64,000 bases of DNA, taken from IMG/VR virus record IMGVR_UViG_3300011934_000017, positions 62,001 through 126,000 of that record. One strand, given 5' to 3'. The translations under genes were made by a program, and so were the position numbers. Below, one piece after another: positions 3,946 through 62,644 of this stretch; the stretch's first letter is position 1, and each line of letters begins with the position of its first letter. The notes below the pieces were generated by a model that saw only the letters and a program-made list of their open reading frames with translations, searched no databases and was not told the DNA's origin.

Positions 3946-4185
3946 TCATGTGATAAAGACTTTCCGCCAATTACCGTCATGACAAAACACACACAGGCCA
4001 TGATAGTCATGATAAAAGAAGGCGCCTATACTAATATTTTTATCAGGAAAAGTATCTCCGCTTTTAGGTACTATATCAAATATTTCTTTTCCACCAACTT
4101 CTCGCATCTGATCGAAAAACATAGTTACGTTCCAAAAAAAAAATGGGGAGTGAGAATTAACCCACACCCCATCGTTATACATCAT
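3946..4185 (-). CDS. Small fibre-associated protein
   Basis: 79 aa; TFP...G..FY....GL....G.W motif like its neighbours; 4-nt overlap coupling. Confidence 0.5.
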   Translation of the reverse strand: MMYNDGVWVNSHSPFFFWNVTMFFDQMREVGGKEIFDIVPKSGDTFPDKNISIGAFFYHDYHGLCVFCHDGNWRKVFIT

Positions 4186-4403
4186 CGAACAGCGGCAACA
4201 CCAGCGCGAGGAACGGTGAAGGTAACTTTGAGAGAAAGGTTATCGATAAGCTCTACACCTAGCGGAATAATCTTTTGTCTCTTTCCTTCGTGATCGACGT
4301 ACACATCAACAACTGGCGCCATAGTTCCAAGATTGTGATATACAATCCATTCTGCCGCAGGCTCGGACTGGGTATGTGTGTGACTATAGAAACCTATAGG
4401 CAT
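4182..4403 (-). CDS. Small virion protein, single EWxxxHNL domain (start adjusted to MPIGFY at 4403)
   Basis: AEWIVYHNLG...IIP...LKVTF motif; start at 4403 avoids overlap with the upstream gene. Confidence 0.65.
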   Translation of the reverse strand: MPIGFYSHTHTQSEPAAEWIVYHNLGTMAPVVDVYVDHEGKRQKIIPLGVELIDNLSLKVTFTVPRAGVAAVR

Positions 4404-4410
4404 AGTATTC

Positions 4411-5010
4411 TCACAAGCAACGTACAAAACCAGTGCGCGGCGAACTGAATGTCACAATAGCCGTGTTTAGGTCTTGGTGGTGAATGGAAAGCGGTTGCAC
4501 TTCTTGGTTGCCAACAAACACTCGAACTAACGGCTCTTGACCCAGAAGATGATTCACTTCCCAAATAGCAGAAGCCGTGTCGAAATTCTGTTCGTAAGTG
4601 TAGTTAGCACGAGGAACACCGTCTGTATTACCAATCATAAGAACGGCACGACCTGCCTGCTCTTTCGAAAAGTGAATGGTGGTATTATTGAAATCACATT
4701 GAACTTCGTCAGGAATAATGTGCTTGCCTTCTGTACTAATAACCTGAGCAAGAAGGTGAGAAGTGTTTAGATTGTGATCAATTACCCACTCCGTAGAGGC
4801 CGCAGCTTGATCATGAATGAACGTGTTCATTGGAGGCGTCAAAGGTATCCAAATGGGAAGACCTTCATCAACTTCGATACAGATCATTACACGTTGACCT
4901 TTGAAGATAAACTGACCTACTTTAGGGCTTTCAGGAAAGTTTTCTTGCTGATCAAGCACGGGATTCAAGAGCAGGTTATTTAGCAAGTTTAGATTGCCGT
5001 GTACCTTCAT
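4411..5010 (-). CDS. Virion protein with two W-x-x-x-H-[NL]-L domains
   Basis: TEWVIDHNLN and IWEVNHLLG repeats; AGGAG RBS upstream. Confidence 0.7.
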   Translation of the reverse strand: MKVHGNLNLLNNLLLNPVLDQQENFPESPKVGQFIFKGQRVMICIEVDEGLPIWIPLTPPMNTFIHDQAAASTEWVIDHNLNTSHLLAQVISTEGKHIIPDEVQCDFNNTTIHFSKEQAGRAVLMIGNTDGVPRANYTYEQNFDTASAIWEVNHLLGQEPLVRVFVGNQEVQPLSIHHQDLNTAIVTFSSPRTGFVRCL

Positions 5011-5034: not shown

Positions 5035-5052
5035 TTGGGGCCGAAGCCCCAA
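5035..5052 (-). terminator. GC stem with cUUCGg tetraloop (terminator or mRNA-stabilising hairpin)
   Basis: Minus strand TTGGGGC-TTCG-GCCCCAA just after the stop of 5057..6763; U-tract is weak. Confidence 0.6.
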
Positions 5053-5056
5053 CTAT

Positions 5057-6763
5057 TTATTCCGGAGCCACGGCTTTGAGACCTGTTACAATAACGCGAC
5101 AAGTTGCAGCTTGGGTGAACGTAACGCTCAAGCTATTATCGTCGGTGTATGTAATGCTTTCAGGAATGATAACTTCATCCGAAGAATCTACTACGGTTAC
5201 TTGGACGTACTTATTGCCCAAGTTGTGAGTAACAACGTGAGATACAGCAGCGGTTACTTGCTCCGAATAAACAAAGTAGCCATTTTCCATGCGAGTTGTC
5301 AGCGCTGTGATAGTATCATTTACGCCTGTAATCTGTGTGCCTAAATAACCTTTAGATACAGCAGCAACACCAGTGGAAGCGGACTGATCTTCACTATGAA
5401 GCAGAAGCTCACCCGTCATCGCTTCTGCGCCGTCACGTCCTAAGAATGTATTGCGAAGCTCTGCGCGGTCAACCAACACACCAGTTTCATCTACTGTGAT
5501 ACCGGATTGTGCAGGAGTCTGTACGCTCAGCTTGATACCATCACCGCCTTGCAAGCCGTTAGCAAGGGTTGTGGCATTCAGGTGCGTTTCGTTCAGACCA
5601 GAAGCTTTGGCACGCAAACCTGATTCAGAGTTTTCAAGTGTAGCATTGTCAGCTTTTACAGCAACTTTGGCATCAATGGAGGTGCTGGCGTTAACGCCAT
5701 CTTCAGTCAGGAAAATACCGCCGTTGAGGAGCGCATCAACACCTAACGCATCGTCGTTAGTAGAAGCAACACCAGGACCCATATCAATCTGAATGTTGTT
5801 GCCGTCTTTTTCAAGACCCGTTCCAGCAGTTACACCCGATAGACCACCAAAGTCAGCCCACATAGCGCCATTGTAGAACTGGAAAGATGAACGATTACGA
5901 TTCCAAACCAGAGCACCTACACCGACTTCACTTACATCATATGCAATAACGAACTGAGTACCGTCGTACTGTACAATATCTCCAGCACCAAGTTCTGCAA
6001 TGGTACCGAAGTTAGTGTGAAGAGCTACAGGCGTACCGATAATGTAACGGTCGCCCTCTGCAGGTGTTTCACCAGGGTCGAGAGTATCATCGGTCTGACG
6101 ATCAAGAACGTCAGCTTGGAAATCAAGACCCAGAACAGCAGTCTCAAGGTCTACTTGACGAACGGCATCTGTAGGACCTTCAGGAGAACCTAAACCTTGA
6201 ACGCGAAAACCACTCAAGTTTAGATTGCCGGTCATAGAATCGCCAGCTTTATCTACAGGCACATAACCCAGAGTAGCTTCTTTTCCATCAAGCTGAGTTT
6301 GTACGTTAGCTGTCACACCTGCCAGATGCTCTACTTCGGTAGACTTAGCAGAGGTAGTTGCTGCAATTTTACCAGTTCCGTCTGTAATAGCAATCATGTT
6401 GAATGCTAGATCGTCTACTAGAATAGATGTTGCCGCACCGGTAACGTTGTCTTGCTTTGTGTCGGCTACTGTACTCAGATAGCCTTTAGATACCGCAGTA
6501 GTTGGATCAGAAGACGATTGGTCAGAGCTATTAAGGGTAAGCTCCCCGACCATCGCGTTAGTACCATCCAGGGCCAAATAGTCACCGAGATTACCACCTT
6601 TCGCAATGTTCTGTACTTCGGAACCATCGAAGTATTTCAAAGAGCCGTCTGTAGTGTTAAACCACACACGACTTACAACAGGATCAAGAGGATCTGTAGC
6701 AAGTTGTTCTACTTTAAGGTCTTTGATAAGACCAGCTACACTTAGATTACCATTAACATGCAT
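5057..6763 (-). CDS. Tail fibre/virion appendage protein
   Basis: Fibre motifs (YLALDG..AMVG.L, VDKAGDSMTGNL, TAGTGLEKDGN), an internal duplication (DQS.S..AVSKGYL twice) and a C-terminal HNLG domain. Confidence 0.7.
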   Translation of the reverse strand: MHVNGNLSVAGLIKDLKVEQLATDPLDPVVSRVWFNTTDGSLKYFDGSEVQNIAKGGNLGDYLALDGTNAMVGELTLNSSDQSSSDPTTAVSKGYLSTVADTKQDNVTGAATSILVDDLAFNMIAITDGTGKIAATTSAKSTEVEHLAGVTANVQTQLDGKEATLGYVPVDKAGDSMTGNLNLSGFRVQGLGSPEGPTDAVRQVDLETAVLGLDFQADVLDRQTDDTLDPGETPAEGDRYIIGTPVALHTNFGTIAELGAGDIVQYDGTQFVIAYDVSEVGVGALVWNRNRSSFQFYNGAMWADFGGLSGVTAGTGLEKDGNNIQIDMGPGVASTNDDALGVDALLNGGIFLTEDGVNASTSIDAKVAVKADNATLENSESGLRAKASGLNETHLNATTLANGLQGGDGIKLSVQTPAQSGITVDETGVLVDRAELRNTFLGRDGAEAMTGELLLHSEDQSASTGVAAVSKGYLGTQITGVNDTITALTTRMENGYFVYSEQVTAAVSHVVTHNLGNKYVQVTVVDSSDEVIIPESITYTDDNSLSVTFTQAATCRVIVTGLKAVAPE

Positions 6764-6805: not shown

Positions 6806-7612
6806 TTAGCTTGTTTGTTCACAGTTAGGATTAACAATCTCCAAATCTTCCAACCAAGTACGGGATTCGATGAAAGTTTGAAGTTCTTCGATGATCTGGG
6901 ATCTTGGTTTAATTCCATCTGATCGTACAACATAATCACGTACTTTAACGTGAATCTTGGAGCGTCTGTCCAGCAGTTTAGACTCATAATACTGGATACG
7001 TTCCACTTCTGCGGACACCTCTCTGTTAGATGAATATTGAAGAGAGATATCGTCCAGATGTAACATCAAAGTCTGCGGATGTTTATTGTTGGTCGAGAGT
7101 TTCTTACGGACAACATCGGAACCTAACAGGCTGTCCAATTCATAAAGCTCAAACAGCGTAGAGTTTAGATATTCTACCAAACATTCTGTAATGTAGGGAA
7201 AGGCAATAATCTGCGTCATACCTTCGACGTCCAAGATCATTCCGCTCAACACTTCCAGCTTTTGTTGATGTATGAACGTCCAATGTTCTACAAATTCTTC
7301 GGTGAACACATCGGCATTGTTAGATAGAATTGTTTCAATCTCTTCCGACATTTCTACCAGGTTAAGTCTTATCTCATTCGCATCTTCAGTTGATATCTCC
7401 TTTTTATCTAGTAGAAAGGTTTCCGTATAGAAAAGCCAATCGGCATAGCGATTGAACATTAGAAGAAGAATTTCCTTTGCTTCTTCACCAAACCCATTAT
7501 CGGACGTGACAAGCTGATTTAAGATGAAAGCTTTGGAATTATAGTAACCCTCCAATGCTTTCGATGCTGCTGACCGGTAACGAATGTTGTTACGTACAAA
7601 GGCCATTATCAT
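6806..7612 (-). CDS. Hypothetical all-helical protein
   Basis: 268 aa, L/E-rich, coupled to the upstream gene by a 4-nt overlap. Confidence 0.55.
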   Translation of the reverse strand: MIMAFVRNNIRYRSAASKALEGYYNSKAFILNQLVTSDNGFGEEAKEILLLMFNRYADWLFYTETFLLDKKEISTEDANEIRLNLVEMSEEIETILSNNADVFTEEFVEHWTFIHQQKLEVLSGMILDVEGMTQIIAFPYITECLVEYLNSTLFELYELDSLLGSDVVRKKLSTNNKHPQTLMLHLDDISLQYSSNREVSAEVERIQYYESKLLDRRSKIHVKVRDYVVRSDGIKPRSQIIEELQTFIESRTWLEDLEIVNPNCEQTS

Positions 7613-8169
7613 ATTCCTCTATTTCGATCCTGAAGCCTTCCCATACCCAACAAAGCACCCAGGATCTGGTTTTGCTTCTCGTTTAAGTTAGTCATGCTGC
7701 GAGTCAATTCAACAATCTGTCTTTCCAAAGAATCCTCTCGCGCATTTGTATCTGCATTATGAGAAGTTAAGTTGTCGGTTAATTTTGAGACCGCGAAACT
7801 CAAAGCTTCAATCTTAGGCATAAGTTCAGCGGTATCTTTATTCGATGCAGAGGCCTTGATTGTGTCTGAAATTACTTTCTCTACCTGTTGGAGCTTTTCC
7901 CCGCTTTCTGTTGAACCGATTTCCAAAGCTTGTCGCAGTTTGTGAAGCGCAGTTTCCATTTCTTCAAGTTGTTTCGCCAACAGAGAAAAAGAACTTTCGC
8001 CTGCAGCATTTACTCTATCTTGGAGCTCTTCATGCTTTTCCTTTAGGTCCTTGTGAGACTCAATGAGAGGAATTACAAAGAAATAATAGCCCAAAATAGC
8101 GCTGATGCTTAACAACACTGCAATGGATGTCGGAAGGGGATTGCCCGCTAAAGCTGATATGATATCCAT
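7609..8169 (-). CDS. N-terminal transmembrane + coiled-coil protein (holin-like topology)
   Basis: Hydrophobic SIAVLLSISAILGYYFFVIPLI followed by ~140 aa of heptad-like sequence. Confidence 0.5.
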   Translation of the reverse strand: MDIISALAGNPLPTSIAVLLSISAILGYYFFVIPLIESHKDLKEKHEELQDRVNAAGESSFSLLAKQLEEMETALHKLRQALEIGSTESGEKLQQVEKVISDTIKASASNKDTAELMPKIEALSFAVSKLTDNLTSHNADTNAREDSLERQIVELTRSMTNLNEKQNQILGALLGMGRLQDRNRGI

Positions 8170-8180
8170 TTTGATTCCTA

Positions 8181-8459
8181 TTAACAGTCAGCGTTAGTTG
8201 GTTCGACCAAAATCGTTCTATGGTCCGAGTTATCTTGATCAACCGTGATAAAAATTTTCGATACTCCAGGATTAACAAAGTAGCATTCCTTTCCCGTACT
8301 CTTATCTTCAACGCATACTTTAGAGATGCATTGGAGACTTTCTAGGACAACAGATTCTTTTTCACGGTAGTTGTTGGCTTTGAATATAGGAAAGAGTACG
8401 AGGAACACCATTAAAGCTAAAAGACATAGAAGTAGAAACCGTGCTACCTTTCCATTCAT
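8181..8459 (-). CDS. Small single-pass membrane/exported protein
   Basis: RFLLLCLLALMVFLVLFPIF hydrophobic segment; four Cys in the short soluble part. Confidence 0.55.
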   Translation of the reverse strand: MNGKVARFLLLCLLALMVFLVLFPIFKANNYREKESVVLESLQCISKVCVEDKSTGKECYFVNPGVSKIFITVDQDNSDHRTILVEPTNADC

Positions 8460-9355
8460 CTGCTGGTCTCCACATAAGAGATTTTATTTCCCTCGAAAAG
8501 GACGAACTGAGTTAGATTAAGTTGAGATACTCGACTGAGATTGATTCCTATTTCAGCAGGCAAAGCACTTGTAGGATTACCATCTATTGCTTCTAAAATA
8601 ACAGAAGCAATAGATTCTGTTCCAATGCCTACACCTACCGCTAAAGTTTGATTCGACCTTAATGTTCCTATCTCCACGTGTTTACTGTTGATTCTTGTTA
8701 TTATTGAATCTATTTGTTCGGAATATATAACAGAAAAAGAGTCACCATCTACTATACGAAAAGCATTGTTGATGATAACACCTGAATATTTTTCGCTGTT
8801 TATTTCCAACAAAGCTGCTCGAAGTTCCGTTGCTCTGCTAACGTCGTAAGTTTTAAAATCTACGCCTTTTTCTTTGGAAATTCGCGCAAACTCACGAAGT
8901 CTTCTCTGGCTAAAGTCCGACGTATCGCTTATTAGATAGTATTGAGGACGTATTCTCGATACATGTTCCCGAACAAGACTGCTGACTTCCATTATCGCAG
9001 AAGGAGTAGCAGCCCCTTTATTTCGTATACCTATTACATAAGGAATGTGAGTATAGTTATGATTATTTTGAAAACCAAGATCGGATAAATCTCTTCCTAG
9101 TACAACTAAATTAGAGAAGGAATTCACTCTATCTTTCAAACCTTCGGCTACCAAAACATCTGACTGCGAATAGTTGTCCAGAGAAAAATCACGCAAACTC
9201 AAAGAACTTACTGTCCATTCAGGTCGTTCCCTCTTTATGGCATTTCCTATCGACGTTCCATAAAGATCAGACACGTTTTTAGACTGGATAATATACAAAT
9301 CTGAATAGACAGGGTAAGACAACAACAATAGAACGGTAAAAATAAACTTTAACAC
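8456..9355 (-). CDS. Secreted protein resembling an ABC-type periplasmic substrate-binding protein (GTG start at 9355)
   Basis: AAGGAGG RBS 5 nt before GTG; signal peptide VLKFIFTVLLLLSYPVYS; YYLISD..., IGINLSRVSQLNL tail like the INLxxAxxLGL end of ABC_sub_bind proteins. Confidence 0.45.
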   Translation of the reverse strand: MLKFIFTVLLLLSYPVYSDLYIIQSKNVSDLYGTSIGNAIKRERPEWTVSSLSLRDFSLDNYSQSDVLVAEGLKDRVNSFSNLVVLGRDLSDLGFQNNHNYTHIPYVIGIRNKGAATPSAIMEVSSLVREHVSRIRPQYYLISDTSDFSQRRLREFARISKEKGVDFKTYDVSRATELRAALLEINSEKYSGVIINNAFRIVDGDSFSVIYSEQIDSIITRINSKHVEIGTLRSNQTLAVGVGIGTESIASVILEAIDGNPTSALPAEIGINLSRVSQLNLTQFVLFEGNKISYVETSR

Positions 9356-9365
9356 TGAAACCTCC

Positions 9366-10238
9366 TTATGATATAGGTAGCACTTTTGCACCTCCTGCAA
9401 CATCGATAGCAAATGTGACCTTAACGTTGTTTTCATCTTGAACGATAATGTCGGCAGGCCATACAATAGTGTTGCCTTCAAATACTTGCACAATAATATT
9501 GTAAGTATTCAAATTATGAGCAATGTTCCATTCAGAAGTCGGAGTCTCCTGAACGTATGCAAATCCCTTTGCAGCAGAATTGAGCAACGTTTCTTCCAAT
9601 GTTGTCATACCCGTCTGCACTGTATCTAGTCGTCCTTCAACAACCGTCGTTCTGTTTCGAACGCTCCGAATCTGGTTGTTTAGATTGCCAAAGAACATCT
9701 GAAGGGAGCTGGTAAGATAACGTAGAGGTCCGAGACTAAATTCGAGAAAAGAGCGAGGAAACGCCTCATCATCTGCATACTCTTCACCTGCTTCCAATGT
9801 GCGTGTCTTCAATGCCCCTGTTAGCTGACCGCCCGATAGAGGTAGGACTTCCATGTCTTCCGCTGTAGTAGAGTGTGGATTACCTATCAACGCGATATGA
9901 TCGTATAGTTCTTGATGTTCTGGCTCGGGCAAGTCCCAAACCTGATTAACATAGAAGTTGCTTTCCTCTAACACTTCTGACCAAGCGTGAAGATACGTAC
10001 CGGAATTGCTGCGGGAAGACCGACGAAGCACCTTTCCAAAATCCGCGCTATTAGGATCAGTCACTATCCACATAACGTTTAGCGGTGAGGTAACATCATG
10101 TGGTTCATTTTGTGATACAACGAAACGAACATTATTATAATTGGTATTCTGATTACTTAAAGCCACAATAACAGGTAACGAGGCAGAATGCCCGCGCGCT
10201 TCTGCCGCTGACAGAACACGTTCTTTGACATTAATCAT
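9366..10238 (-). CDS. Fibre-associated protein with coiled coil and C-terminal EWNIAHNL domain
   Basis: GNPHSTTA..LPLSGGQLTG fibre motif; SEWNIAHNLN domain. Confidence 0.65.
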   Translation of the reverse strand: MINVKERVLSAAEARGHSASLPVIVALSNQNTNYNNVRFVVSQNEPHDVTSPLNVMWIVTDPNSADFGKVLRRSSRSNSGTYLHAWSEVLEESNFYVNQVWDLPEPEHQELYDHIALIGNPHSTTAEDMEVLPLSGGQLTGALKTRTLEAGEEYADDEAFPRSFLEFSLGPLRYLTSSLQMFFGNLNNQIRSVRNRTTVVEGRLDTVQTGMTTLEETLLNSAAKGFAYVQETPTSEWNIAHNLNTYNIIVQVFEGNTIVWPADIIVQDENNVKVTFAIDVAGGAKVLPIS

Positions 10239-10719
10239 TTTTCTCTCCTGTTACTTTGAATTGGCTAGCTTTGTTGTCTATAATCTTTTTCATTACAGTG
10301 AGAAGATCGTCTTTTTTAACATCAACAGACAAAGGTTTGCCGTCTTTATAGGCAAGCGCTTTAAAAACTGTCTTAGGTTCAAAAGAAGCTACAGACAAGC
10401 ACTCCATTAGATAGAGTTGAGCCTCTTTGTCTGCAACAAAGTACACATCATTATGAAAAACACCAGCATCCAGTGGATTGACTGGAGTAGGACGTTCTTC
10501 ACTTACCTCTACAGGAACGCGAGTAAGTTGCTTATGTTCGAGGTCTACCTGAAAAGCAAAAGGTGTTCGAACAACAGCATTTCTCAAATCTTCAGTAATC
10601 TCAATGACAGGTTCGGGAATTTCAGAATGTCGCAAGCTGTTATAAAGTCCTTCTACTTTTCCTGTTGAAGGTTCGTAATGCGCATAGTGAACTGGTTTGT
10701 CTGTGCGTCTACGCTTCAT
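10231..10719 (-). CDS. Probable tail-fibre assembly chaperone
   Basis: YAHYEPSTGKVEGLY..H.EIP...IEIT pattern as in Tfa-like chaperones; lies downstream of a fibre gene. Confidence 0.45.
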   Translation of the reverse strand: MKRRRTDKPVHYAHYEPSTGKVEGLYNSLRHSEIPEPVIEITEDLRNAVVRTPFAFQVDLEHKQLTRVPVEVSEERPTPVNPLDAGVFHNDVYFVADKEAQLYLMECLSVASFEPKTVFKALAYKDGKPLSVDVKKDDLLTVMKKIIDNKASQFKVTGEKND

Positions 10720-10720
10720 A

Positions 10721-11527
10721 TTAATCTCCCAAAAGAATCCAATAAAAGTCCCAGCCCGAAGCCGTTACGTTTTGAGTACCGCCAGAACCGTCCGGCTCAA
10801 CATCAAGAAGATTGGTAACGACAGAAAGATTGGCTTTGCCTGTCTCTATAGACGTAACGCGCACTTTGTTCGCTACGTTGGAAGCAGGATTCACCCAAAA
10901 CAGAACTATAGAATGAGGATTAGACACGTCATTCAGCGCTTCAGGAAAAATAATCTCTTTAGTAAGTCCCGGAGTAGGATCAGTAAAACGTCCCCACTGT
11001 AATGAACGTCCAGAAGACACACTTTCCGAAGAAGCTGCATCAGTAGACACAAGAACAGGTGACTCACCATCATAACCTGAGGCACCTTCACCCCCAGCAG
11101 GCCCTTGCGGACCTGTTGCGCCTCTTTCACCTCTTTGCCCAGCGGGACCACGCGGGCCTGCGGGTCCCTGAGGACCCACATCACCTTTCGGACCAGCACA
11201 CCCTGGTACACCAGAACGACCATCGCGACCATTACGCCCACTGTTACCTGGAGCACCTCTAGGTCCTGTAGCGCCACGAGGACCCACACCAATATTGTGT
11301 ACTGTCATGAAGCCTGGGACTTGAACAATCGTTGAGTCGGCGCGATACAGATTTAGAACACCGATTTCCGGATCAAAATCGCCGCGCGTAACATAATTGT
11401 CCTCATCGCTACTATCTCCAGGTGTCTGTACTTCAATTTCACTTCCGTTGTAAACAACATCATCGTTTGGAGACGCATTGTTTCCAGGATCCAGCATGCC
11501 TAGCGGCACTCGTGTTAACTTACCCAT
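10721..11527 (-). CDS. Collagen-like fibre protein (paralog 6) with C-terminal QWG domain
   Basis: 25 contiguous Gly-X-Y triplets; shared N-domain GDFDPEIGVLNL...GF. Confidence 0.8.
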   Translation of the reverse strand: MGKLTRVPLGMLDPGNNASPNDDVVYNGSEIEVQTPGDSSDEDNYVTRGDFDPEIGVLNLYRADSTIVQVPGFMTVHNIGVGPRGATGPRGAPGNSGRNGRDGRSGVPGCAGPKGDVGPQGPAGPRGPAGQRGERGATGPQGPAGGEGASGYDGESPVLVSTDAASSESVSSGRSLQWGRFTDPTPGLTKEIIFPEALNDVSNPHSIVLFWVNPASNVANKVRVTSIETGKANLSVVTNLLDVEPDGSGGTQNVTASGWDFYWILLGD

Positions 11528-11537
11528 AATCTATCCT

Positions 11538-11714
11538 CTAGCGTACTGGAAGCCAAGATGTATTATCAGCGCTTCGTACTTTTGTATTTTCTGGAAACAT
11601 TTGAACCCACGAGCTATTGCCGTTTGTTCTTACTTTCCATCCCCAGTTAGAGAAATTTTGTACCCAGTTCGCGTCAGGATTTTCTCTAACACGTAATGTA
11701 ACAACAGTAGCCAT
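11538..11714 (-). CDS. 58-aa Trp-repeat protein missed by the ORF track
   Basis: Manual translation MATVVTLRVRENPDANWVQNFSNWGWKVRTNGNSSWVQMFPENTKVRSADNTSWLPVR*; AAGGAG RBS; fills the gap; resembles the N-terminus of 11726..15148. Confidence 0.75.
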   Translation of the reverse strand: MATVVTLRVRENPDANWVQNFSNWGWKVRTNGNSSWVQMFPENTKVRSADNTSWLPVR

Positions 11715-11725
11715 CTGTATACTCC

Positions 11726-14700
11726 TTAAGCAGGTCGAGTGACTTTTCTGTAGACGTAGAATCTATCATTTGTATTCGGATTTACGGCAACTCTCGGCCA
11801 GTTAAGCCAGTCGCTGAATGGACGTGTTGTTCCTTGATTTACCCAGCTTCCACTTTCTGCTATCCATGCTCTACCGCTGGATGCACTAAACACCCGCCCT
11901 GCTGTAAACGGCCAAACGACATTTTCGTAGGTAGATTCAGATTGACTGCGAGTGTAGAAACCAAAACGTTGGTCGCCTGAGAATCGAGTCGTTTCTGAAT
12001 AGTCATTTATATTGAAATTACGTGCAGTGAACGAACCTCCGTTAAACTTCTCAGTATCAACTGTAAACGCATCACCGTTTTTACGTACTCTTACTTTGGT
12101 TCTAGCGCCAGACCAACCGCCGGATACATCATCGCCTTCGCCACCCCAGCTCTCTAGCACAGTCACAGAGCTTCCTTCGAGATACAGAAGACCATAACCA
12201 GAAGAAGGTGCATTTCCTCCTTTGTTTCGTACAACAACAAGCTGATAAGGAACACCTCCTTGTACTTGAGCAGCTACCACCAAACCTATACTATCGTCAT
12301 CATTATTGCTAGAGGTTAAAACGGCCTCTAACTCATAATCAGCTACAGCATCAGGACTGATAATGCTGTTGGAGCTACCTGTATTTGTAGGCATTACAAA
12401 GCGATTGTTCGAAGTGTCGTAATACCAATCAGCAGCTTCACCTCCAGCAGAACTTGCCGAAGCATAGTAGTTATCACCATCTACACGCGGCCAAGTGTTA
12501 AACACGTCTTGTAGTGTAGGTGCAGGATTCGCAGCAATAAAGCTTTGGGCTTCTGTATCGGAGTTGAACATGTAAGCTTCAACTTCGGGCATAAAGACAG
12601 AATTTCCAGAACCCAGTGAAACAGTAGGTTCGAAATAAGCACCGCGCCAATCAGATGATGTGATACTGATAACTTCACCTGTATCAATATCGGTGATTTT
12701 CATAATCAGCCAGCTTGGAGTGTTGTGAGGAATGTTCTCACAAAGAACGTATAAGAAATGAACTCCTGGACTGATTGTTACATCTGTCGGCGTAAAATCA
12801 AGCATATCAAGGTCAGCGACGTGCAACCAAGGGCCACCATCTGGCATTACCATAACAGAAGCAAAATCGTCACACTCACCTTGTATACGAATATTACCGG
12901 ATTCTGTGTTGAACATACTTACAGCCATAAATGCTCTGTTACCTTGTACAATCGTATCGCTGGTCAAAGCTATTTGGTAACCATTAAAGCCGTTTGCGTC
13001 GGGTCCTGAAGTCTCTACCATTTTAGGCAGACCTTTAGAGAAGTTGGTAAAGCGTGTTCCTGAATTAGGATGTACAGTAGGACAGTGCGTTCTAAACTGC
13101 CACCAGCTTGCAGAATCATTTATGACTCTTACGTTTTGCAGCCCTGTAGTGGGAGTTATTAAAGCACCAGCACCAACAGCAGGCCAGCGATATACTTCAG
13201 CAACGGTGTCTTCTAAAACAGTACCATCACTTTCAATGCTGATTCTATTAGGTGCACCAGCCGGATACGCAACACTTGGAGCTATTGTGTAGTATTCTGT
13301 TAGAGAGAAGCTATCGTCAGGAGCTATTCCGTCAAATTCAATACGTGTAGCTGCCGCCGAAGTACCTTGATGCTCTTCACTGCAATCCCTTACGCCTTCT
13401 ACACAGTCCATTATATACGACCAATCTGAAACTTCACCTTCTGCTCCATCTACGCGCACTTCGATAAGATCACCAGAAGAAGGATCGTATTCGAACGTGA
13501 GAGAGCCGTTGCCTGACACAGAACCCGATGCTTGAAGTAAATCACCACCTTGAAATACTTGAACATTATCAGGAGAACTGAATGTGTTGAAGCGTATTTT
13601 ACCTTCACCTCCATCAGAACCAAGATCGTGATACATGATAGTAGAAGGTGCACCAACAGAATCTACGCGGCCAGCTTCATCCCCGCAAGTTTTAGGATCG
13701 CTTTCGCTACCACTGCCTATATACGGATCAGAACCACTACCGGATCCACCTCCGCTACTTCCGCCACTTCCACTTCCTCCATGCGGACACCACAAATGAT
13801 ATGTCCATGACTGCATGACTTCTGTAGAGGTGATACGTACAACGACGATAGTATCACCGTCAGCATTCGCAGGATCGTATGGAATTTCTAATAGCCCGTG
13901 ATGATAGCCGGATGCTGCGGTACCTGTTTCAGTAAATCCAGGAGAGGATGCAATTAAGCTGCCTCCATGAAACACTTCACACTTAGCAGCGACCCAAGGA
14001 AACAAATACAGAAGCTCAATCGTTCCAGGTGTAGGTCCCATATCGTGGAACATATCTTGAACCATCGTAGAGGTCGTAGTGACATACGGACCACCACTAT
14101 AAACGCCGCCACATGGATGTATTCTATCCCAAAAGTAGTCACCAGGACAGTAAAGCTTGTAGAGCCAAATAGAGTTCATTGAACCTTCTACTTCTACTCG
14201 AACTTTGCCGTCGCCTCCGTTTCTTCCAGGCCAGAAAAAGTATTCAACTTCACGAGGTGCGATTTCACCCGAGTCTCGTGCAGGAAGCTGAGTCGTAGTG
14301 TGTAACAGTTCGTCACCGTAATAGATTCTATAGCGTTGTGTACCTTCGGTAGACACCCAACGAATATGAACGTTACCTTCAACATCAGGCAAAGTATGAT
14401 AATAACTGCGTCTTTCGGTGTAAGTAGGGTCTTCCTCTAAATGCAAATGTTGATCTACTACAAGCTCGCTACAACCATAAGAATCAGAGTAGTTACCGGA
14501 GCCTGTGGGACTTGTAGAGCTTCCCCCGCCTGTAGTGCCCGGTGGATTTCCGGGACCACCCGATCCTACACTTCCTCCTGTACCGCCACTTCCCGATCCT
14601 CCTGTACCGCCACTTCCCGATCCTCCTGTACCGCCAGAACCTGATCCACCGCTGCCGCCTGTACCTGCACTGCCTCCGCTACCACTTCCACCACTTCCGC

Positions 14701-15148
14701 TTCCTGTGCCTCCATTGTAGTAGCCGTCGTTGTATCCAGAATTTCCAGGACCCCAAGGATATCCTCCAGATGCTCCGTTTCCTGGCCAAGGTGAGCCACC
14801 TCCAGCAGGGCCACCTGTTCCCCAATAACCAGAGTCCCCATCTTCTTCTGCCCAACCCGGCCACGGATCAGTCTCTCCTGGAATTGAGTCAGGTCCACCA
14901 AGATCAGGACCTGAGCCGTTTTCGCCTGTGCCGTCAGGTGTACCACCCATAGCGTCAGACCCACAAAGATCATCAGTAAGACAGTCAATGTTAATCCAAT
15001 AATTATTCGTACCGTGACGCGCTTTCATTCCATTGGAAGGTAACATGCGTCGCCATCCAGAATTTGCTGCATTCCTTACGTACCATTCTGACTGACAGAT
15101 ATCTAGCCAAAGTGAGTTTTCAGGATTTCTTATACGTAAACGACCCAT
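11726..15148 (-). CDS. Large adhesin-like fibre protein: Trp-repeat N-terminus, Gly/Ser linker, ~4 Cys-bounded beta repeats, lectin-like C-terminus
   Basis: 1140 aa; repeats of [YF]H.[LM]...G...VR[VI]...W.Y.[LM].C; C-terminal DDDSIG domain paralogous to 2739..3713. Confidence 0.7.
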   Translation of the reverse strand: MGRLRIRNPENSLWLDICQSEWYVRNAANSGWRRMLPSNGMKARHGTNNYWINIDCLTDDLCGSDAMGGTPDGTGENGSGPDLGGPDSIPGETDPWPGWAEEDGDSGYWGTGGPAGGGSPWPGNGASGGYPWGPGNSGYNDGYYNGGTGSGSGGSGSGGSAGTGGSGGSGSGGTGGSGSGGTGGSGSGGTGGSVGSGGPGNPPGTTGGGSSTSPTGSGNYSDSYGCSELVVDQHLHLEEDPTYTERRSYYHTLPDVEGNVHIRWVSTEGTQRYRIYYGDELLHTTTQLPARDSGEIAPREVEYFFWPGRNGGDGKVRVEVEGSMNSIWLYKLYCPGDYFWDRIHPCGGVYSGGPYVTTTSTMVQDMFHDMGPTPGTIELLYLFPWVAAKCEVFHGGSLIASSPGFTETGTAASGYHHGLLEIPYDPANADGDTIVVVRITSTEVMQSWTYHLWCPHGGSGSGGSSGGGSGSGSDPYIGSGSESDPKTCGDEAGRVDSVGAPSTIMYHDLGSDGGEGKIRFNTFSSPDNVQVFQGGDLLQASGSVSGNGSLTFEYDPSSGDLIEVRVDGAEGEVSDWSYIMDCVEGVRDCSEEHQGTSAAATRIEFDGIAPDDSFSLTEYYTIAPSVAYPAGAPNRISIESDGTVLEDTVAEVYRWPAVGAGALITPTTGLQNVRVINDSASWWQFRTHCPTVHPNSGTRFTNFSKGLPKMVETSGPDANGFNGYQIALTSDTIVQGNRAFMAVSMFNTESGNIRIQGECDDFASVMVMPDGGPWLHVADLDMLDFTPTDVTISPGVHFLYVLCENIPHNTPSWLIMKITDIDTGEVISITSSDWRGAYFEPTVSLGSGNSVFMPEVEAYMFNSDTEAQSFIAANPAPTLQDVFNTWPRVDGDNYYASASSAGGEAADWYYDTSNNRFVMPTNTGSSNSIISPDAVADYELEAVLTSSNNDDDSIGLVVAAQVQGGVPYQLVVVRNKGGNAPSSGYGLLYLEGSSVTVLESWGGEGDDVSGGWSGARTKVRVRKNGDAFTVDTEKFNGGSFTARNFNINDYSETTRFSGDQRFGFYTRSQSESTYENVVWPFTAGRVFSASSGRAWIAESGSWVNQGTTRPFSDWLNWPRVAVNPNTNDRFYVYRKVTRPA
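14573..14636. repeat. 24-bp tandem repeat (~2.7 copies) encoding a GSGSGGTG linker
   Basis: Unit TCCTCCTGTACCGCCACTTCCCGA read directly from the sequence. Confidence 0.85.
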
Positions 15149-15174
15149 GACACCTCCTAATAGGCATTAATAAA

Positions 15175-15678
15175 TCAAGGACGAATCCAAAGAGCGCCCG
15201 CACCTACAGCACCGGGATCAGCAGACTGAATGTAGATATCTACTTTACCGTCTTCACCTTTAGGGCCTGTAGCACCGGTCGCACCCATAGGCCCCATCTC
15301 GCCTTGAGCACCCATCTCACCTTGCGGACCAGTAGCACCCGGAGTTCCAGGAGGTCCTTCACAGCCCGGAGGCCCTTGTAAGCCGTCTTCACCTAGCAGT
15401 CCGTCAGTCCCGTCAACGCCACCTATACCTTGAGCGCCTGCAGGGCCGACACCTATATCACCCTGAGTCATGAAGCCGCGAATCTCTATACTCTGACCAT
15501 TCACTAACGTCAGCTTTAGAGTGCCTGTAACGTCGTTAAAGCTGCCACCAATAACGCCTGTGTTATTGATATCTTCATCTTCTTGGGTGCCGACTTCTTT
15601 ACCGTCGTATCGAACGTCAGAATTAGGACGACCACGAGCTTCAAGCATCGAAAGCGGTGTTCTAGTTAAGCCTCCCAT
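15175..15678 (-). CDS. Short collagen-like fibre protein (paralog 5)
   Basis: 23 Gly-X-Y triplets; ends QSADPGAVGAGALWIRP. Confidence 0.8.
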   Translation of the reverse strand: MGGLTRTPLSMLEARGRPNSDVRYDGKEVGTQEDEDINNTGVIGGSFNDVTGTLKLTLVNGQSIEIRGFMTQGDIGVGPAGAQGIGGVDGTDGLLGEDGLQGPPGCEGPPGTPGATGPQGEMGAQGEMGPMGATGATGPKGEDGKVDIYIQSADPGAVGAGALWIRP

Positions 15679-15851
15679 TACACATCCTCCAGTTTTCTTC
15701 GCATACGCTGTTGCTGTTCTTTTAAAACCTTTTCAATATCGGAAGAGGTCAACTTTGATTTTTTACACGACAAACAAGCACCAAACAATTCAACGCTTAT
15801 TGCTTGAGAAGAGTCGTAAGGCCATATTGCTTTGCATTTTGGACATTTCAT
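15678..15851 (-). CDS. 57-aa CxxC...CxxC zinc-finger protein missed by the ORF track
   Basis: Manual translation MKCPKCKAIWPYDSSQAISVELFGACLSCKKSKLTSSDIEKVLKEQQQRMRRKLEDV*; TAATG stop/start overlap with the next gene. Confidence 0.7.
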   Translation of the reverse strand: MKCPKCKAIWPYDSSQAISVELFGACLSCKKSKLTSSDIEKVLKEQQQRMRRKLEDV

Positions 15852-15863
15852 GTTTTGTTCTCT

Positions 15864-16526
15864 CTAAGGCCAAGGTGTTCCACCGCTTGAGCTGGAAGAA
15901 TACATAGAAGGAGGATTAGCATTGGGATTTATCCATAAGCCACCTCCGCCGATAGAGCCGGGGTCTGAAGTAGATACGACAATGTTTATTGTACCGTCTT
16001 CACCTGGCGGTCCTGGTGGCCCCATATTTCCAGGTTCACCTTGAGGACCAGTAGGGCCAATAGGTCCAATCTCACCAGTAGGACCCATTCTTCCTACAGG
16101 GCCTTTAGCGCCTTTTGTGCCTCGAACTCCGGGAGGGCCTTGCATACCTCTACGTCCTGATCTTCCCTTAGGTCCTTGAGGTCCACGCTCACCTTGAGGT
16201 CCTGCACATCCTTGTTCTCCGGGCAGACCATTTTTTCCGGGTTTACCCGGCTTACCATCTTTTCCTCGCGGTCCTTCGGGGCCAGTAGGTCCTTTTGGGA
16301 TAGTGTCTGCTCTGTGAAAGCCAGAAATGCGAATCCTTTCGCCGTTCTTCATGTGTAAAATTAGACTACCTGTAACAGCATCTAGGTGCCCGTAATCAAT
16401 CTCTGAAATAAGCGCTTCTTTAGGTTGATCAAAATTCAATCTTTCTTGCTGCGCCACTATATCTGTATCAGGTTCTTGTTTTCGAGCACTGATCTGATTT
16501 AATATTGGCTTTGTTAGTCCTGCCAT
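15864..16526 (-). CDS. Collagen-like fibre protein (paralog 4), strongly basic helix
   Basis: ~34 Gly-X-Y triplets; STSDPGSIGGGGLWI motif. Confidence 0.8.
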   Translation of the reverse strand: MAGLTKPILNQISARKQEPDTDIVAQQERLNFDQPKEALISEIDYGHLDAVTGSLILHMKNGERIRISGFHRADTIPKGPTGPEGPRGKDGKPGKPGKNGLPGEQGCAGPQGERGPQGPKGRSGRRGMQGPPGVRGTKGAKGPVGRMGPTGEIGPIGPTGPQGEPGNMGPPGPPGEDGTINIVVSTSDPGSIGGGGLWINPNANPPSMYSSSSSGGTPWP

Positions 16527-25082: not shown

Positions 25083-28000
25083 TTAGCTATAATCAACGCG
25101 GAAGGTAATCTCGCCAATACCGGGAAAGTCTGAACGATACAGGTACCAATCTTCATCGACACCGCCTATAGTGCGTGTCACTGTAAGAGGTCCGTAAGTT
25201 GAACCTATACCACCTGCTGGCCATGTTGCTCCATCCATACCGCCTGATAGACCCAGCGAAGGTTCTGTGAACGTAGCAGTTCCTAACGCCGCAGGATGCG
25301 CATAATAAATGTAATTGCTTCCTGTCGTTTCTGTAGTGAAAGAATTACCGGACGATGATGTAGACATAGTATCATTCAGATACGTGCCAAGTGAAGCAAA
25401 GTCACTTAATCCTTCTGGTCCAACACCATACATAGGAGCATACGAAGGTGCAGAGGGCGGAGGCGGTGGAGTAGGAGCGGCACTACCTGCTGTGATATTG
25501 ATAAGCTTAGTTGCTTCTACCGAATGCAAGCCGTCTTCATATCGCGCTTTAATCGTTATACTGGTACCGGTCGGTACGTTACCTATATAAAGCACACCAT
25601 CATCTTCGATACTCACATTAGGAATTATAGTTTGAACAGACCACTCGATAGATTCGTTCGGAAGCACAGTGCCTGTTCCAGGAGAAACAATGTCACCTAC
25701 ATAGAAAAGCTCCGTGTTGTATGACTCGAACGAATTAGCAGGCACAGAACTTTCACCTAGAATGATCAACGTTTGTAACGGTGAAGCTTCTGCGAGCAAT
25801 GTTACCTGCATTGTGTCTGTAGCGGTATGTCCGTCACACGCCCAGTCTGCCGTAATGTTAACAACCGTTGTCTGGTTGTTCATGGAACGCAAGAAACCAT
25901 TGCGATCTATAATAGCAACATCGGGCGATACATCGATACTCCAGTCATTCGAAACTGCCAGCTCTTGATTGCATCCGTTGTCAAACTCAATCATAAACAC
26001 GTATGAACCCATACGACTCACAGGAATCACGGACGGTCCTGAAATACGCGAACTAATAGGAACAGAAGGTCCCGGTCGATCATGCCTTTTTACTACAACA
26101 GGAAACTCTGCTACTTCGCGGAAATAACGCGCAACGACAATTACCAGTGTGTCCTCTTCAACAGAACGACCTTGCATTATGCCCGGACTAACGATATCAG
26201 CTTCAGCTTCTGGGTTATTCAGAGGATCGGGACTACGCACTGTCCAAACAGGTTCTACAAGCTCGTCGCTTCCATCTTCATACCAAGCCCGTGCCTCAAA
26301 AGTCACTCTTCGATTTTCAAGAACTTCTGAATCACCTAGAATGCGTAGACCTGTAATCAAGTTAACATCAGGTATGAGAACAATAGGTTTAGTCTGGACG
26401 TGTCTTTTAGCTCCGCTATCGAAGACAGCACGTATTTCAACAATGCCTGCATTCCCAGAAGTAAACGTTAGCTCACCTGCAGGTGTCATGGTAACACCGG
26501 GATACGAACCATTGAGTGACCACACAGGACTAACTTCTATCTCACGACCGTCAGAATAGCGAGCAAATGCACGATAGTTAGCGGCTATTCCTTGTCTTAC
26601 GTTCTCTTGCCCTACAATGTTTATGCTTTCGATGTTTATAGGCGTCGTGTATACCGAAACCACTTTCGACACAGTAATATCTAGCGCTCTAGCTGTTAGC
26701 TCTACGGAAATAGATGTGCTTACAGAACCTGTCGTGAAAACACCTGATTCTGATATGGAGAAACGATCTGACATCCACACAGGATCAACTTGAGTGGTAA
26801 CGCCGTTTGACCATTCGATAATAGCGACAAAACGATGATTGGAAAGCTCTACTACACTGCTTGGTCCTTGAATCGTTAACGTCTTAGGTGTTATATAGTC
26901 TCTCTTTATCTCTACGACTTTTACCGCAATATGTTTTTGTCCTTGGTGTTGATACGTAGCTTTCAGCTCAGCTAAATAATCGGCATCAGGAATACCAGCA
27001 GATGCTCTGCCGCCTTGATCTACATAAAGTCCAGGAGAAGAGGACTCCCATAGCGCAAGCACGTCTTCTTGCGAACCGTCTGAATAAAATACGTGAGCGC
27101 GATAGGTATGCGAAGTATTTTCAGAAAGTTCTGGAGGTCCGATTATATGAATGGAATCGACTTTGATGTTTGTACTGACGGCTTTTATAATAACAGGTCG
27201 AACCGACTTTAGATGATAGCTATCAGCAGTGACGTAGCTGGCTTCAACATACACCACTTTATCTTCTTCCGGATTCCCTGTAAAAACTTCGTAGCCTTTG
27301 ATTCCGGTCACGTAAGGCGAAAGCACTTTTATCGTTACGTCGTTGAGCGCTTTGGTAGTTCTGTCATCGAAGTAACCTTCTACAGTCACCTTGAAAGAAT
27401 TTCCACCTGACACAGAAGTCGGAGCGTTCAACAGTATGCTTTCAAGTACAGCGCCAGCACCTTTGACTATTACGGTTTTAGTGTTACTCATTCCACCGAA
27501 CGTCGATGTGATATTTACTGTGGTATCACGGTAAACAGGAGCGAATACTGCAACACCGCTCGCCGTGAACGACACAATATCAGGACGGTCTGTAGTCATC
27601 ACAGGAGAAGGAACGCGAACAAGTCTACGGCCTGCTGTACTTGGAGGAGCGGAGTCAAATTTCACGGAGAATGTATGAGAACCTACGCCCGGAAGTTGAG
27701 TACGATATATGTACCAAGTCTGAAGCTTTCCATCTACGCGGCGATACAAATACATGGGAAGAGGGCTGCTATCGCCTTCCCACTTCACTGTGTTGCTTGG
27801 GTTTTGAATAGTAGCGTAACCAAGATACGCAGGATAAGCGAAGTAGCCGTAATGCCCGGCCGGTACGTTAAGTGAAAAAGACGGTGAAGCGAGGCTAGAT
27901 ACACTGCTTGTTAAAAACGTGTTCACATCAGCATTGTTTTCAACAGGAGTATCGGCAGAGCCATATACAGGCATCGTGCTTGTCGTAGTGTATCCCGACC

Positions 28001-62487: not shown

Positions 62488-62644
62488 GATGCGTTCCTCT
62501 AAAGAATCTTGAGTCAGGCTTCTTAGGTGTTTCAACTAAAGCGTTAAGCTGTGCACCTAAGTCTTTGGACTGTTTCTGACCTGCCAGAAGTTCTTTGAGA
62601 AAATCGTCGTCGCTCATTGTCATAATGCGCTTGTTATTCGTCAT
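62456..62644 (-). CDS. Small hypothetical protein
   Basis: 62 aa; fills the gap between mgtC and the glycosylase. Confidence 0.4.
   Translation of the reverse strand: MTNNKRIMTMSDDDFLKELLAGQKQSKDLGAQLNALVETPKKPDSRFFRGTHREHLRAGSKS

What the first reader, a model, noticed from the sequence alone, without database searches (positions are those of the whole stretch)
6806..9355. Periplasmic binding-like protein plus two membrane proteins embedded in the fibre operon: candidate sensing or lysis-control module
Seen: four tightly coupled non-fibre genes: a signal-peptide protein resembling ABC substrate-binding proteins, a small TM protein with 4 Cys, a TM + coiled-coil protein, and a helical soluble protein. 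No ABC ATPase or permease is present in the window. Established: T4 lysis inhibition uses a single-TM holin regulated by periplasmic and cytoplasmic antiholins. Inference: a late-expressed module that could link a periplasmic small-molecule signal to lysis timing or superinfection exclusion.
Basis: inference. Interest (0 to 1): 0.6.

Follow-up and report, generated by a model that had tools for sequence, protein, structure and literature searches.

The report
Orphan binding-protein membrane module in fibre operon
Inside the tail-fibre operon of a 220-kb jumbo phage sit four tightly packed genes (an exported protein with a solute-binding fold, two single-pass membrane proteins and a soluble helical protein) that are inherited together across a whole phage clade, have no known function and are partly mislabelled in databases.

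Summary
Window 6806-9355 (minus strand) holds four tightly packed genes.

- A: 299 aa, exported. High-confidence type-I periplasmic-binding fold, closest to PF04392 solute-binding proteins.
- B: 92 aa, N-in/C-out single-pass protein. Its outer domain has four conserved cysteines.
- C: 186 aa, with an invariant membrane helix, a variable coiled coil and an invariant C-terminal tail.
- D: 266 aa, soluble, with a helical bundle plus a small alpha/beta domain. The fold has no known relative.

The cassette lies in the same place in all 15 loci examined from PaBG/Lu11/NCTB/Erwinia-type jumbo phages. Even the most distant A relatives sit in the same cassette. The whole genome has no ABC ATPase or permease, so A is an orphan binding protein. 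The database label "ABC transporter" on D is unfounded. A separate cassette elsewhere in the genome resembles the PaBG holin-like/lipoprotein/endolysin lysis cassette, so B and C need not be the primary lysis proteins.

Function is unproven. My best inference (about 0.35) is a non-virion complex across the inner membrane that couples a periplasmic cue to a late envelope event such as lysis timing or a superinfection response. Rivals are receptor masking, a fibre-assembly role, nutrient uptake and accessory lysis effectors. The module is undescribed and can be tested in PaBG or Erwinia phages.

The parts
8456..9355 (-). Gene A: exported 299-aa protein with a type-I periplasmic-binding fold (PF04392-like). 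Orphan: no transporter partner in the genome.
   Evidence: AF2 model pLDDT 90.9. Foldseek gives 372 PDB hits at E<=1e-3, all of the PBP/LacI fold. VIA-align top hits are 6hni_A (Z 17.4, 245 aa) and 3lft_B (Z 16.3). 2 of 24 relatives hit PF04392 weakly. 28 relatives of about 300 aa were found.
9302..9355 (-). Signal peptide of A (residues 1-18).
   Evidence: Short hydrophobic N-terminus. 23 of 24 family members have a basic n-region plus a hydrophobic h-region, many with Ala-x-Ala sites.
9361..9367 (-). Ribosome-binding site (AAGGAGG) of A, overlapping the stop codon of the upstream fibre-like gene.
   Evidence: Sequence read directly.
8181..8459 (-). Gene B: 92-aa bitopic membrane protein with predicted N-in/C-out topology. 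Start overlaps the end of A by 4 nt.
   Evidence: Hydropathy. N-flank K+R 25 against D+E 3 over 13 homologues. No PHROG, Pfam or NCBIfam family.
8184..8381 (-). Outer domain of B (residues 27-92) with four conserved cysteines, predicted to form two periplasmic disulfides.
   Evidence: Exactly 4 Cys after the membrane helix in 13 of 13 homologues. The disulfides are inferred.
7609..8169 (-). Gene C: 186-aa bitopic protein with a membrane helix, a variable coiled coil and an invariant C-terminal tail.
   Evidence: Alignment A3 of 18 sequences. phrog_28931 at E 1e-16. Only generic coiled-coil matches in PDB, NCBIfam and PADLOC.
8062..8139 (-). Highly conserved membrane helix of C (residues about 11-36, rich in Pro, Tyr and Phe).
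   Evidence: Invariant and near-invariant columns in A3. The N-flank lacks K/R (3 against 48 on the C-flank, 14 homologues), so N-out/C-in is favoured.
7612..7683 (-). Invariant C-terminal 24 residues of C (163-186), a candidate docking peptide.
   Evidence: Invariant columns in A3. The docking role is inferred.
6806..7606 (-). Gene D: 266-aa soluble acidic protein. Residues 2-161 form five long helices and residues 179-258 form a small alpha/beta domain. Alternative start at 7612.
   Evidence: AF2 pLDDT 91.8. No significant PDB match. BFVD returns only orthologues and the Atlas nothing. No Walker A, ABC signature or membrane helix in 24 of 24 members. phrog_19088 at E 5e-55, labelled 'ABC transporter'.
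9366..10238 (-). Upstream flank: 290-aa fibre-like protein. Its PHROG label 'HNH endonuclease' is a mislabel.
   Evidence: phrog_24148 plus tail and fibre PHROGs. Same position in all related loci.
5057..6763 (-). Downstream flank: 568-aa virion structural tail protein.
   Evidence: phrog_16122 at E 1e-114. The PaBG homologue gp257 was detected in virions.

Best explanation
The four genes encode a phage-specific, non-virion complex centred on the inner membrane, made late together with the tail fibres.

Shown:
- A is an exported protein with a PF04392-like type-I binding fold and no transporter partner.
- B is a single-pass protein with four conserved cysteines after its membrane helix.
- C is a single-pass protein with an invariant membrane helix, a variable coiled coil and an invariant C-terminal tail.
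- D is a soluble protein of unknown fold.
- The four are inherited strictly together.

Inferred:
- A and the outer domain of B (predicted to be disulfide-bonded) form the periplasmic half.
- C is oriented N-out/C-in and, with D, forms the cytoplasmic half.
- The helices of B and C link the two halves within the membrane.
- Binding of a periplasmic ligand or partner by A is passed to D, which tunes a late envelope event. The most likely events are the timing of lysis or the response to superinfecting phage.

This resembles the way phage T4 brackets its holin with a periplasmic and a cytoplasmic antiholin.
For: - Fold of A. Export signals in 23 of 24 relatives.
- Nearly all conserved residues of A are polar (Q24, R55, D60, S65, N197, N223, H226, N272, R275; F199 is the exception). 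Several lie at or just after the C-terminal ends of beta strands, where type-I binding proteins line their cleft (my reading of the topology).
- No ABC ATPase or permease in the genome.
- Charge bias and four conserved Cys in B. Opposite charge bias in C.
- Conserved ends and a variable middle in C.
- D has no signal or membrane segment.
- Gene spacing is 4-nt overlaps or spacers of at most 11 nt, with no promoter or terminator signal above chance inside the operon.
- Strict four-gene linkage in 15 of 15 loci, including the most distant A relatives.
- A has the highest dN of the seven genes tested and loses identity about as fast as the fibre genes fib1140 and p162. B, C and D also have higher dN than the fibre-like fib290 and the two virion proteins, as expected for parts that meet the host.
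- In Lu11 and in metagenomic locus L018 the lysis genes lie just downstream of this operon.
- From my own knowledge: the T4 holin gene t sits directly after tail-fibre gene 38.
Against: - No ligand, interaction or phenotype is known.
- No sequence or profile similarity to any holin, antiholin, spanin or exclusion protein.
- The topology of C rests only on charge counts. Net charge of the flanks is ambiguous.
- A cassette resembling the PaBG lysis cassette exists elsewhere, so a lysis role would be regulatory at most.
- The module is conserved across phages of very different hosts, which argues against a narrowly host-specific signal.
- D precedes a virion protein everywhere. In Vibrio phages a D homologue with a C-like partner occurs without A or B, so the core function may not need a periplasmic sensor.
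Confidence: 0.35

Rival explanations
1. Receptor masking or superinfection exclusion. The exported and membrane proteins alter or block an envelope component used for adsorption or DNA entry. This would protect progeny from cell debris or shut out competitors. The genes would sit with the fibre genes because they must match receptor specificity.
For: - The module lies inside the fibre operon in all relatives.
- A loses identity about as fast as the fibre genes fib1140 and p162.
- B is a small protein with a cysteine-rich periplasmic domain. This resembles small exclusion proteins such as T4 Sp or T5 Llp in architecture only (own knowledge).
- T5 llp and the lambdoid cor genes lie next to receptor-binding genes (own knowledge).
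Against: - No similarity to Imm, Sp, Llp or Cor families.
- B is anchored in the inner membrane with about 65 outer residues and could not reach outer-membrane receptors.
- Known exclusion genes are mostly early or prophage-expressed, not late.
- This model gives no role to the cytoplasmic D or to the conserved C-D pair.
Confidence: 0.2
2. Morphogenetic role. C and D form a membrane-tethered chaperone or assembly platform for the fibre and baseplate proteins encoded on either side, with A and B as accessory anchors.
For: - D always sits directly before the virion tail protein and after fibre-like genes.
- D is the best conserved of the four.
- In the Alcaligenes phage Afa-NA1 record, D alone lies between a fibre gene and the virion protein gene. 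That record looks unreliable.
Against: - A and the outer domain of B are exported, away from cytoplasmic virion assembly.
- No structural similarity of D to known fibre chaperones.
- In Vibrio phage pv27 the D homologue is not near fibre genes.
Confidence: 0.2
3. Accessory lysis effectors. C acts as an i-spanin-like or holin-like membrane protein and B as its partner.
For: - C has a membrane helix plus coiled coil, like i-spanins.
- The genes are late.
- Lysis genes lie just downstream in Lu11 and L018.
Against: - B has no conserved lipobox. Its one cysteine within the helix is not conserved.
- C has no cysteines and its charge bias points to a cytoplasmic coiled coil.
- A separate cassette of a membrane protein, a holin-like protein and a lipoprotein exists at genome 43.1-44.1 kb. 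It matches the PaBG cassette that ends in an endolysin.
- No holin or spanin family hits.
Confidence: 0.08
4. Auxiliary metabolic gene. A is a phage-supplied solute-binding protein that plugs into a host ABC importer to raise nutrient uptake, as cyanophage PstS does.
For: - Binding-protein fold with an export signal.
- No phage-encoded permease or ATPase, so any transport would need host parts.
Against: - A occurs only inside the four-gene cassette and never alone.
- A diverges to below 25% identity among related phages and has no close cellular homologue, so it was not acquired recently from a host.
- Late expression with the fibres is a poor time for nutrient uptake.
- B, C and D are left unexplained.
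Confidence: 0.07

Closest known systems
PF04392 (ABC_sub_bind) solute-binding proteins, e.g. C. difficile CD0873 (6HNI) and S. pneumoniae 3LFT
   Same: Two-lobed type-I periplasmic-binding fold over about 245 residues (Z 17.4 and 16.3). N-terminal export signal. Similar size of about 300 aa.
   Different: Sequence identity is 9-12%. The window protein has no Pfam hit, and only 2 of 24 relatives hit weakly. No ABC permease or ATPase is encoded nearby or anywhere in the genome. The protein is always linked to three unrelated phage genes. The ligand is unknown.
Phage T4 lysis-inhibition complex (holin T with periplasmic antiholin RI and cytoplasmic antiholin RIII)
   Same: The logic matches: late proteins on both sides of the inner membrane bracket single-pass membrane proteins. 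The T4 holin gene lies at the end of the fibre gene cluster (own knowledge).
   Different: No sequence or family similarity. The periplasmic part here is a 30-kDa binding-protein fold, not a small helical domain. A distinct holin-like gene exists elsewhere in the genome. No lysis-inhibition phenotype is known.
Binding-protein-dependent membrane sensors of bacteria (LuxP-LuxQ, TorT-TorS, ChvE-VirA)
   Same: A type-I binding protein without a transporter is paired with membrane proteins that reach the cytoplasm. LuxP was among the structural matches.
   Different: No kinase, HAMP or other known output domain is present. Signalling would have to pass through two separate single-pass proteins to a protein of unknown fold.
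Two-component spanins (i-spanin Rz and o-spanin Rz1)
   Same: C has an N-terminal membrane helix followed by coiled coil. It lies next to a small cysteine-containing partner gene.
   Different: B lacks a lipobox. C lacks cysteines and is predicted to be N-out/C-in. The genes are not next to an endolysin. A lipoprotein candidate lies elsewhere.

Membership tests
Type-I periplasmic binding protein fold / PF04392 ABC_sub_bind (gene A) | Two alpha/beta lobes joined by a hinge, superposable on solved family members | tested here: met
   Model pLDDT 90.9. 6hni_A gives Z 17.4 at rmsd 4.6 over 245 aa, and 3lft_B gives Z 16.3. 372 Foldseek hits at E<=1e-3.
Type-I periplasmic binding protein fold / PF04392 ABC_sub_bind (gene A) | Sequence-profile match above the Pfam gathering score | tested here: not met
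   No hit for the window protein. 2 of 24 relatives hit at best E 3.9e-4. The family profile finds nothing in PDB sequences.
Type-I periplasmic binding protein fold / PF04392 ABC_sub_bind (gene A) | Export signal | tested here: met
   23 of 24 family members have a basic n-region plus a hydrophobic h-region. The annotated Erwinia starts omit a conserved upstream signal. No dedicated signal-peptide predictor was available.
Type-I periplasmic binding protein fold / PF04392 ABC_sub_bind (gene A) | Cognate ABC permease and ATPase encoded with it | tested here: not met
   PF00005 gives only a 14-bit P-loop fragment, far away. PF02653 gives nothing in the 220-kb genome.
Type-I periplasmic binding protein fold / PF04392 ABC_sub_bind (gene A) | Binds a small ligand in the inter-lobe cleft | not testable with these tools
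   The only evidence is conserved polar residues at or near strand ends.
ABC transporter (database label on gene D, phrog_19088) | Walker A, ABC signature motif, or a multi-helix membrane domain | tested here: not met
   None in 24 of 24 members. Maximum 19-residue hydropathy is 1.68 or less. No Pfam hit. The fold is unlike any ABC domain.
T4-type holin/antiholin lysis-inhibition system | Profile similarity to T, RI or RIII families | tested here: not met
   No such family among PHROG, Pfam or NCBIfam hits.
T4-type holin/antiholin lysis-inhibition system | Delayed lysis on superinfection that depends on these genes | not testable with these tools
   Needs infection experiments.
Two-component spanin | o-spanin: small outer-membrane lipoprotein with a lipobox | tested here: not met
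   The N-terminal helix of B has no conserved lipobox cysteine. The PaBG homologue has no cysteine in the helix.
Two-component spanin | i-spanin: N-in membrane helix with a periplasmic coiled coil | tested here: inconclusive
   A membrane helix plus coiled coil is present. K+R counts are 3 on the N side and 48 on the C side over 14 homologues, which favours the opposite orientation. No experimental topology exists.
Virion structural protein | Detected in purified particles | tested here: inconclusive
   The PaBG proteome of 14 gel bands lists gp257, the homologue of the downstream neighbour, but none of gp253-256. In the Y3 record only the neighbour is called a virion protein. No deep proteome was found.
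Anti-phage defence or exclusion proteins (PADLOC) | Profile match to a known defence component | tested here: not met
   Only coiled-coil noise for C and nothing for A, B or D.

The most novel reading that the evidence does not exclude
A clade of jumbo phages carries its own periplasmic receptor. An orphan solute-binding protein senses a small molecule or envelope fragment outside the cytoplasm. Through two single-pass proteins it signals to a cytoplasmic effector of new fold, which sets when the cell lyses or how virions mature. This would be a phage-encoded transmembrane sensing pathway with no kinase and no bacterial counterpart.
Probability: 0.2. Interest if true: 0.85.

Novelty: new variant of a known kind. 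Interest (0 to 1): 0.55.

Why it matters
Phage decisions are known to use cytoplasmic receptors such as the arbitrium and quorum-sensing systems, and T4 uses small antiholins. A phage-encoded periplasmic binding protein wired to membrane partners has not been described.

- The module is conserved across phages of Pseudomonas, Erwinia, Dickeya and uncultured aquatic hosts.
- It evolves faster than the virion proteins around it.
- It can be studied in culturable systems (PaBG on PAO1, Erwinia phages Y3 and Alexandra).
- Working it out could reveal a new way in which large phages read the state of the envelope late in infection.

There is also a practical correction. The label "ABC transporter" on D is already quoted as an auxiliary metabolic gene in a published phage description and should be dropped. 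Gene B is missing from several GenBank records.

Tried and rejected
- Complex prediction of D with the soluble part of C (residues 38-186) gave no verdict, score 0.00. It is not evidence either way.
- Word-index search for A found only one relative. The exhaustive search was needed.
- Megablast of the region against phage records found nothing.
- D against PDB (Foldseek and VIA-align), the ESM Atlas by features and by shape, and the family profile against PDB sequences gave only generic helical-bundle noise. BFVD returned only four orthologues.
- The profile of C against PDB gave only coiled coils.
- NCBIfam and PADLOC gave nothing specific.
- Endolysin hunt in the genome with PF05838, PF00959, PF01464, the Lu11 endolysin and the PaBG muramidase was blank every time. 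The PF05838 control also failed, so that result shows nothing. LemA was blank too.
- The IMG/VR pattern scan with the D alignment gave only 3 loci.
- The promoter and terminator scan showed nothing above chance.
- Pairwise dS was saturated, so dN/dS is only qualitative.
No expression data were obtained.
- Spanin reading rejected: no lipobox, opposite charge bias and a separate lipoprotein cassette.
- Transporter reading of D rejected: no ABC motifs.
- The Salmonella Sen-NF and Alcaligenes Afa-NA1 records were not used as evidence. Sen-NF has exactly abutting CDS coordinates, and both are of unexpected size (108 and 78 kb) for this phage type.
- Literature searches found no description of the module.
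Full report
**What is in the sequence.** The finding lies on the minus strand of a run of same-strand genes.
- A, 8456-9355, starts at a GTG preceded by AGGAGG.
- B, 8181-8459, overlaps the end of A by 4 nt.
- C, 7609-8169, starts 11 nt after B.
- D, 6806-7606, starts 2 nt after the stop of C. An alternative ATG at 7612 overlaps that stop. Relatives and the database record support the 266-aa form.
- Upstream are collagen-like and other fibre genes (9366-16526). Downstream is a 568-aa virion tail protein (5057-6763), followed by more fibre-like genes.
- A consensus scan finds no promoter or terminator signal above chance inside this stretch. Co-transcription with the fibre genes is therefore likely but not shown.

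**What genome this is.** The window is bases 62001-126000 of a 220,237-bp virus record with terminal repeats. D and the flanking genes tie it to the jumbo-phage group of Pseudomonas phages PaBG and Lu11, phage NCTB, and the Erwinia and Dickeya Alexandravirus and Sasquatchvirus phages. PMC7412058 calls this the "Lupandier group".

**Synteny.** The same four-gene cassette lies between the same two neighbours in every locus of this type that I examined, 15 of 15:
- PaBG (PaBG_00253-256), NCTB, Lu11, Erwinia pEa_SNUABM_32 and Erwinia Y3;
- seven metagenomic contigs, L012-L018;
- two contigs found through the most distant A relatives.

A was never found outside the cassette. B is unannotated in Lu11 and Y3 and uncalled in L016, but the ORF is there with the same cysteine pattern. 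The annotated starts of the Erwinia A genes omit a conserved upstream signal sequence.

Vibrio phages of about 191 kb, such as pv27, carry a D homologue. It is preceded by a protein with a membrane helix plus coiled coil that resembles C in position and architecture only. These phages lack A and B, and the pair is not in a fibre operon.

**Protein A.** An exhaustive search found 28 relatives, nearly all 244-321 aa long.
- 23 of the 24 aligned relatives have an N-terminal signal-type segment.
- The AlphaFold model is confident, with pLDDT 90.9.
- Foldseek returns 372 PDB matches at E<=0.001. All are type-I periplasmic-binding or LacI-type folds.
- An independent all-against-all alignment ranks two PF04392 solute-binding proteins first: CD0873 (Z 17.4 over 245 residues) and 3LFT (Z 16.3). 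Sugar-binding and LacI proteins follow at Z 13-14.
- At the sequence level the link is below threshold. The window protein has no Pfam hit, 2 of 24 relatives hit PF04392 at best E 4e-4, and the profile finds nothing in PDB sequences.
- The conserved residues are nearly all polar, and several lie at or just after strand ends, where such proteins line their cleft. This is my reading.
- The whole genome has no ABC ATPase above cut-off and no permease of the matching family.

**Proteins B and C.** B has basic residues before its single helix (K+R 25, D+E 3 over 13 homologues). It has exactly four cysteines after the helix in all 13. This predicts an N-in/C-out protein with two periplasmic disulfides. 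B matches no family in any library.

C has an almost invariant, proline- and aromatic-rich membrane helix, a variable coiled coil and an invariant last 24 residues. Its short N-terminus has almost no basic residues: 3 K+R against 48 in the 15 residues after the helix, summed over 14 homologues. By the positive-inside rule the coiled coil is cytoplasmic. Net charge is ambiguous, so I put this at about 70%. All database matches of C are generic coiled coils.

**Protein D.** Twenty-four homologues gave a confident model, pLDDT 91.8, with five long helices and a small alpha/beta domain.
- Nothing in the PDB, the ESM Atlas or BFVD matches beyond its own orthologues.
- It has no Walker A, no ABC signature and no membrane segment in any member.
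- The label "ABC transporter" comes from phrog_19088. It has spread into RefSeq records and into a paper that lists it as an auxiliary metabolic gene. The label is unsupported.

**Rates of change.** Against the closest relative, dN is 0.28 for A, 0.23 for C, and 0.18 for B and D. It is 0.15 for the fibre-like fib290 and 0.07-0.11 for the two virion proteins. dS is saturated, at 1.4 or more or not calculable. Across more distant loci A loses identity about as fast as the fibre genes fib1140 and p162, and D is the best kept of the four. All four genes are under purifying selection, so they are real genes. They change faster than the virion proteins beside them.

**Lysis genes elsewhere.** A hydropathy scan finds few credible membrane proteins in the genome. 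Two of them, plus a lipoprotein with a lipobox (phrog_23384, E 1e-17), form a cassette at genome 43.1-44.1 kb. PaBG has the same order followed by an endolysin. In Lu11 and in locus L018 the equivalent small genes and endolysin lie just downstream of the fibre operon. I could not find the endolysin of this genome. The primary lysis machinery is thus probably separate, but it is sometimes adjacent.

**Interpretation.** The anatomy is well supported: an exported orphan binding protein, a protein with a periplasmic cysteine-rich domain, a protein with a probable cytoplasmic coiled coil, and a cytoplasmic protein, all inherited as one unit and packed for coupled translation.
- The most economical reading is a complex that spans the inner membrane and acts on the envelope late in infection. 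I favour ligand- or partner-gated control of lysis timing or of the response to superinfection (0.35). This is an analogy with the T4 holin bracketed by antiholins on both sides of the membrane, and T4 gene t also follows the fibre genes (own knowledge).
- Receptor masking or exclusion (0.2) explains the fibre-operon location and the fast change of A, but not D.
- A fibre-assembly role for C and D (0.2) explains position and conservation, but not two exported parts.
- Accessory spanin- or holin-like function (0.08) and nutrient uptake through a host transporter (0.07) fit poorly.
- The single complex prediction allowed gave no verdict and is not counted.

**Comparison with what is known.** A has the fold of PF04392 proteins but fails the sequence and transporter-context tests. 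I file it as a divergent orphan relative and not as a member. The system as a whole matches no described phage or bacterial system. It works most like a binding-protein-dependent sensor or the T4 lysis-inhibition complex, but shares no component with either. No paper in the library describes it.

**Verdict.** Interest is 0.55: a conserved, undescribed and experimentally tractable module whose mechanism is still open.

Noticed in passing
Outside the window: genome G000:C1 43095-44124 (locus L010:1096-2125), minus strand: Candidate lysis cassette: a 92-aa protein with an N-terminal membrane helix, a 98-aa holin-like protein and a 149-aa lipoprotein with a lipobox (phrog_23384). PaBG has the same gene order, gp213-gp211, followed there by an endolysin. 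No endolysin was found in this genome.
   Followed up: partly
window 62634-63305 (-): A 223-aa four-helix membrane protein of the MgtC family (PF02308, E 3e-33). This is an unusual gene for a phage and a possible host-physiology gene.
   Followed up: partly
window 9366-10238, 5057-6763, 4411-5010 and 4182-4427 (all -): Four proteins of the operon share a C-terminal domain of about 60 residues (phrog_21918/24148/16122/28944 cross-hits). phrog_24148 is labelled 'HNH endonuclease', but its members here are fibre-like proteins, so that label also looks wrong.
   Followed up: partly
L003:5208-5492 (Lu11), L019:about 4200-4490 (Erwinia Y3), L016:5171-5452: The gene B homologue is missing from the Lu11 and Y3 GenBank annotations and uncalled in a metagenomic contig. 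The ORF and its four-cysteine pattern are present in all three.
   Followed up: yes
L005:4115-4318 and L019 upstream of 3323: The annotated starts of the Erwinia-phage A homologues cut off a conserved upstream signal-type sequence that may also contain a lipobox-like motif. The true start overlaps the preceding gene.
   Followed up: partly
window 5035-5052: A GC-rich 7-bp hairpin lies in the 46-nt gap between the virion tail protein gene and the next gene. It may be an attenuator or an RNA-stability element.
   Followed up: no
window 33230-34369 (+): A thymidylate synthase of 379 aa aligns end to end with a 266-position Pfam profile, so it carries about 100 extra residues as insertions. It is on the opposite strand to most of the window.
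   Followed up: no
window 25083-30989 (-): A 1968-aa ORF with no Pfam match at E<=0.001.
   Followed up: no
L007 (Salmonella phage Sen-NF, PV359490) and L020 (Alcaligenes phage Afa-NA1, PV550095): These records carry parts of the same fibre operon. Sen-NF has exactly abutting CDS coordinates, and both have unexpected genome sizes (108 and 78 kb). In Afa-NA1, genes A-C are absent and D follows a fibre gene directly. They may be assembly or annotation artefacts.
   Followed up: no
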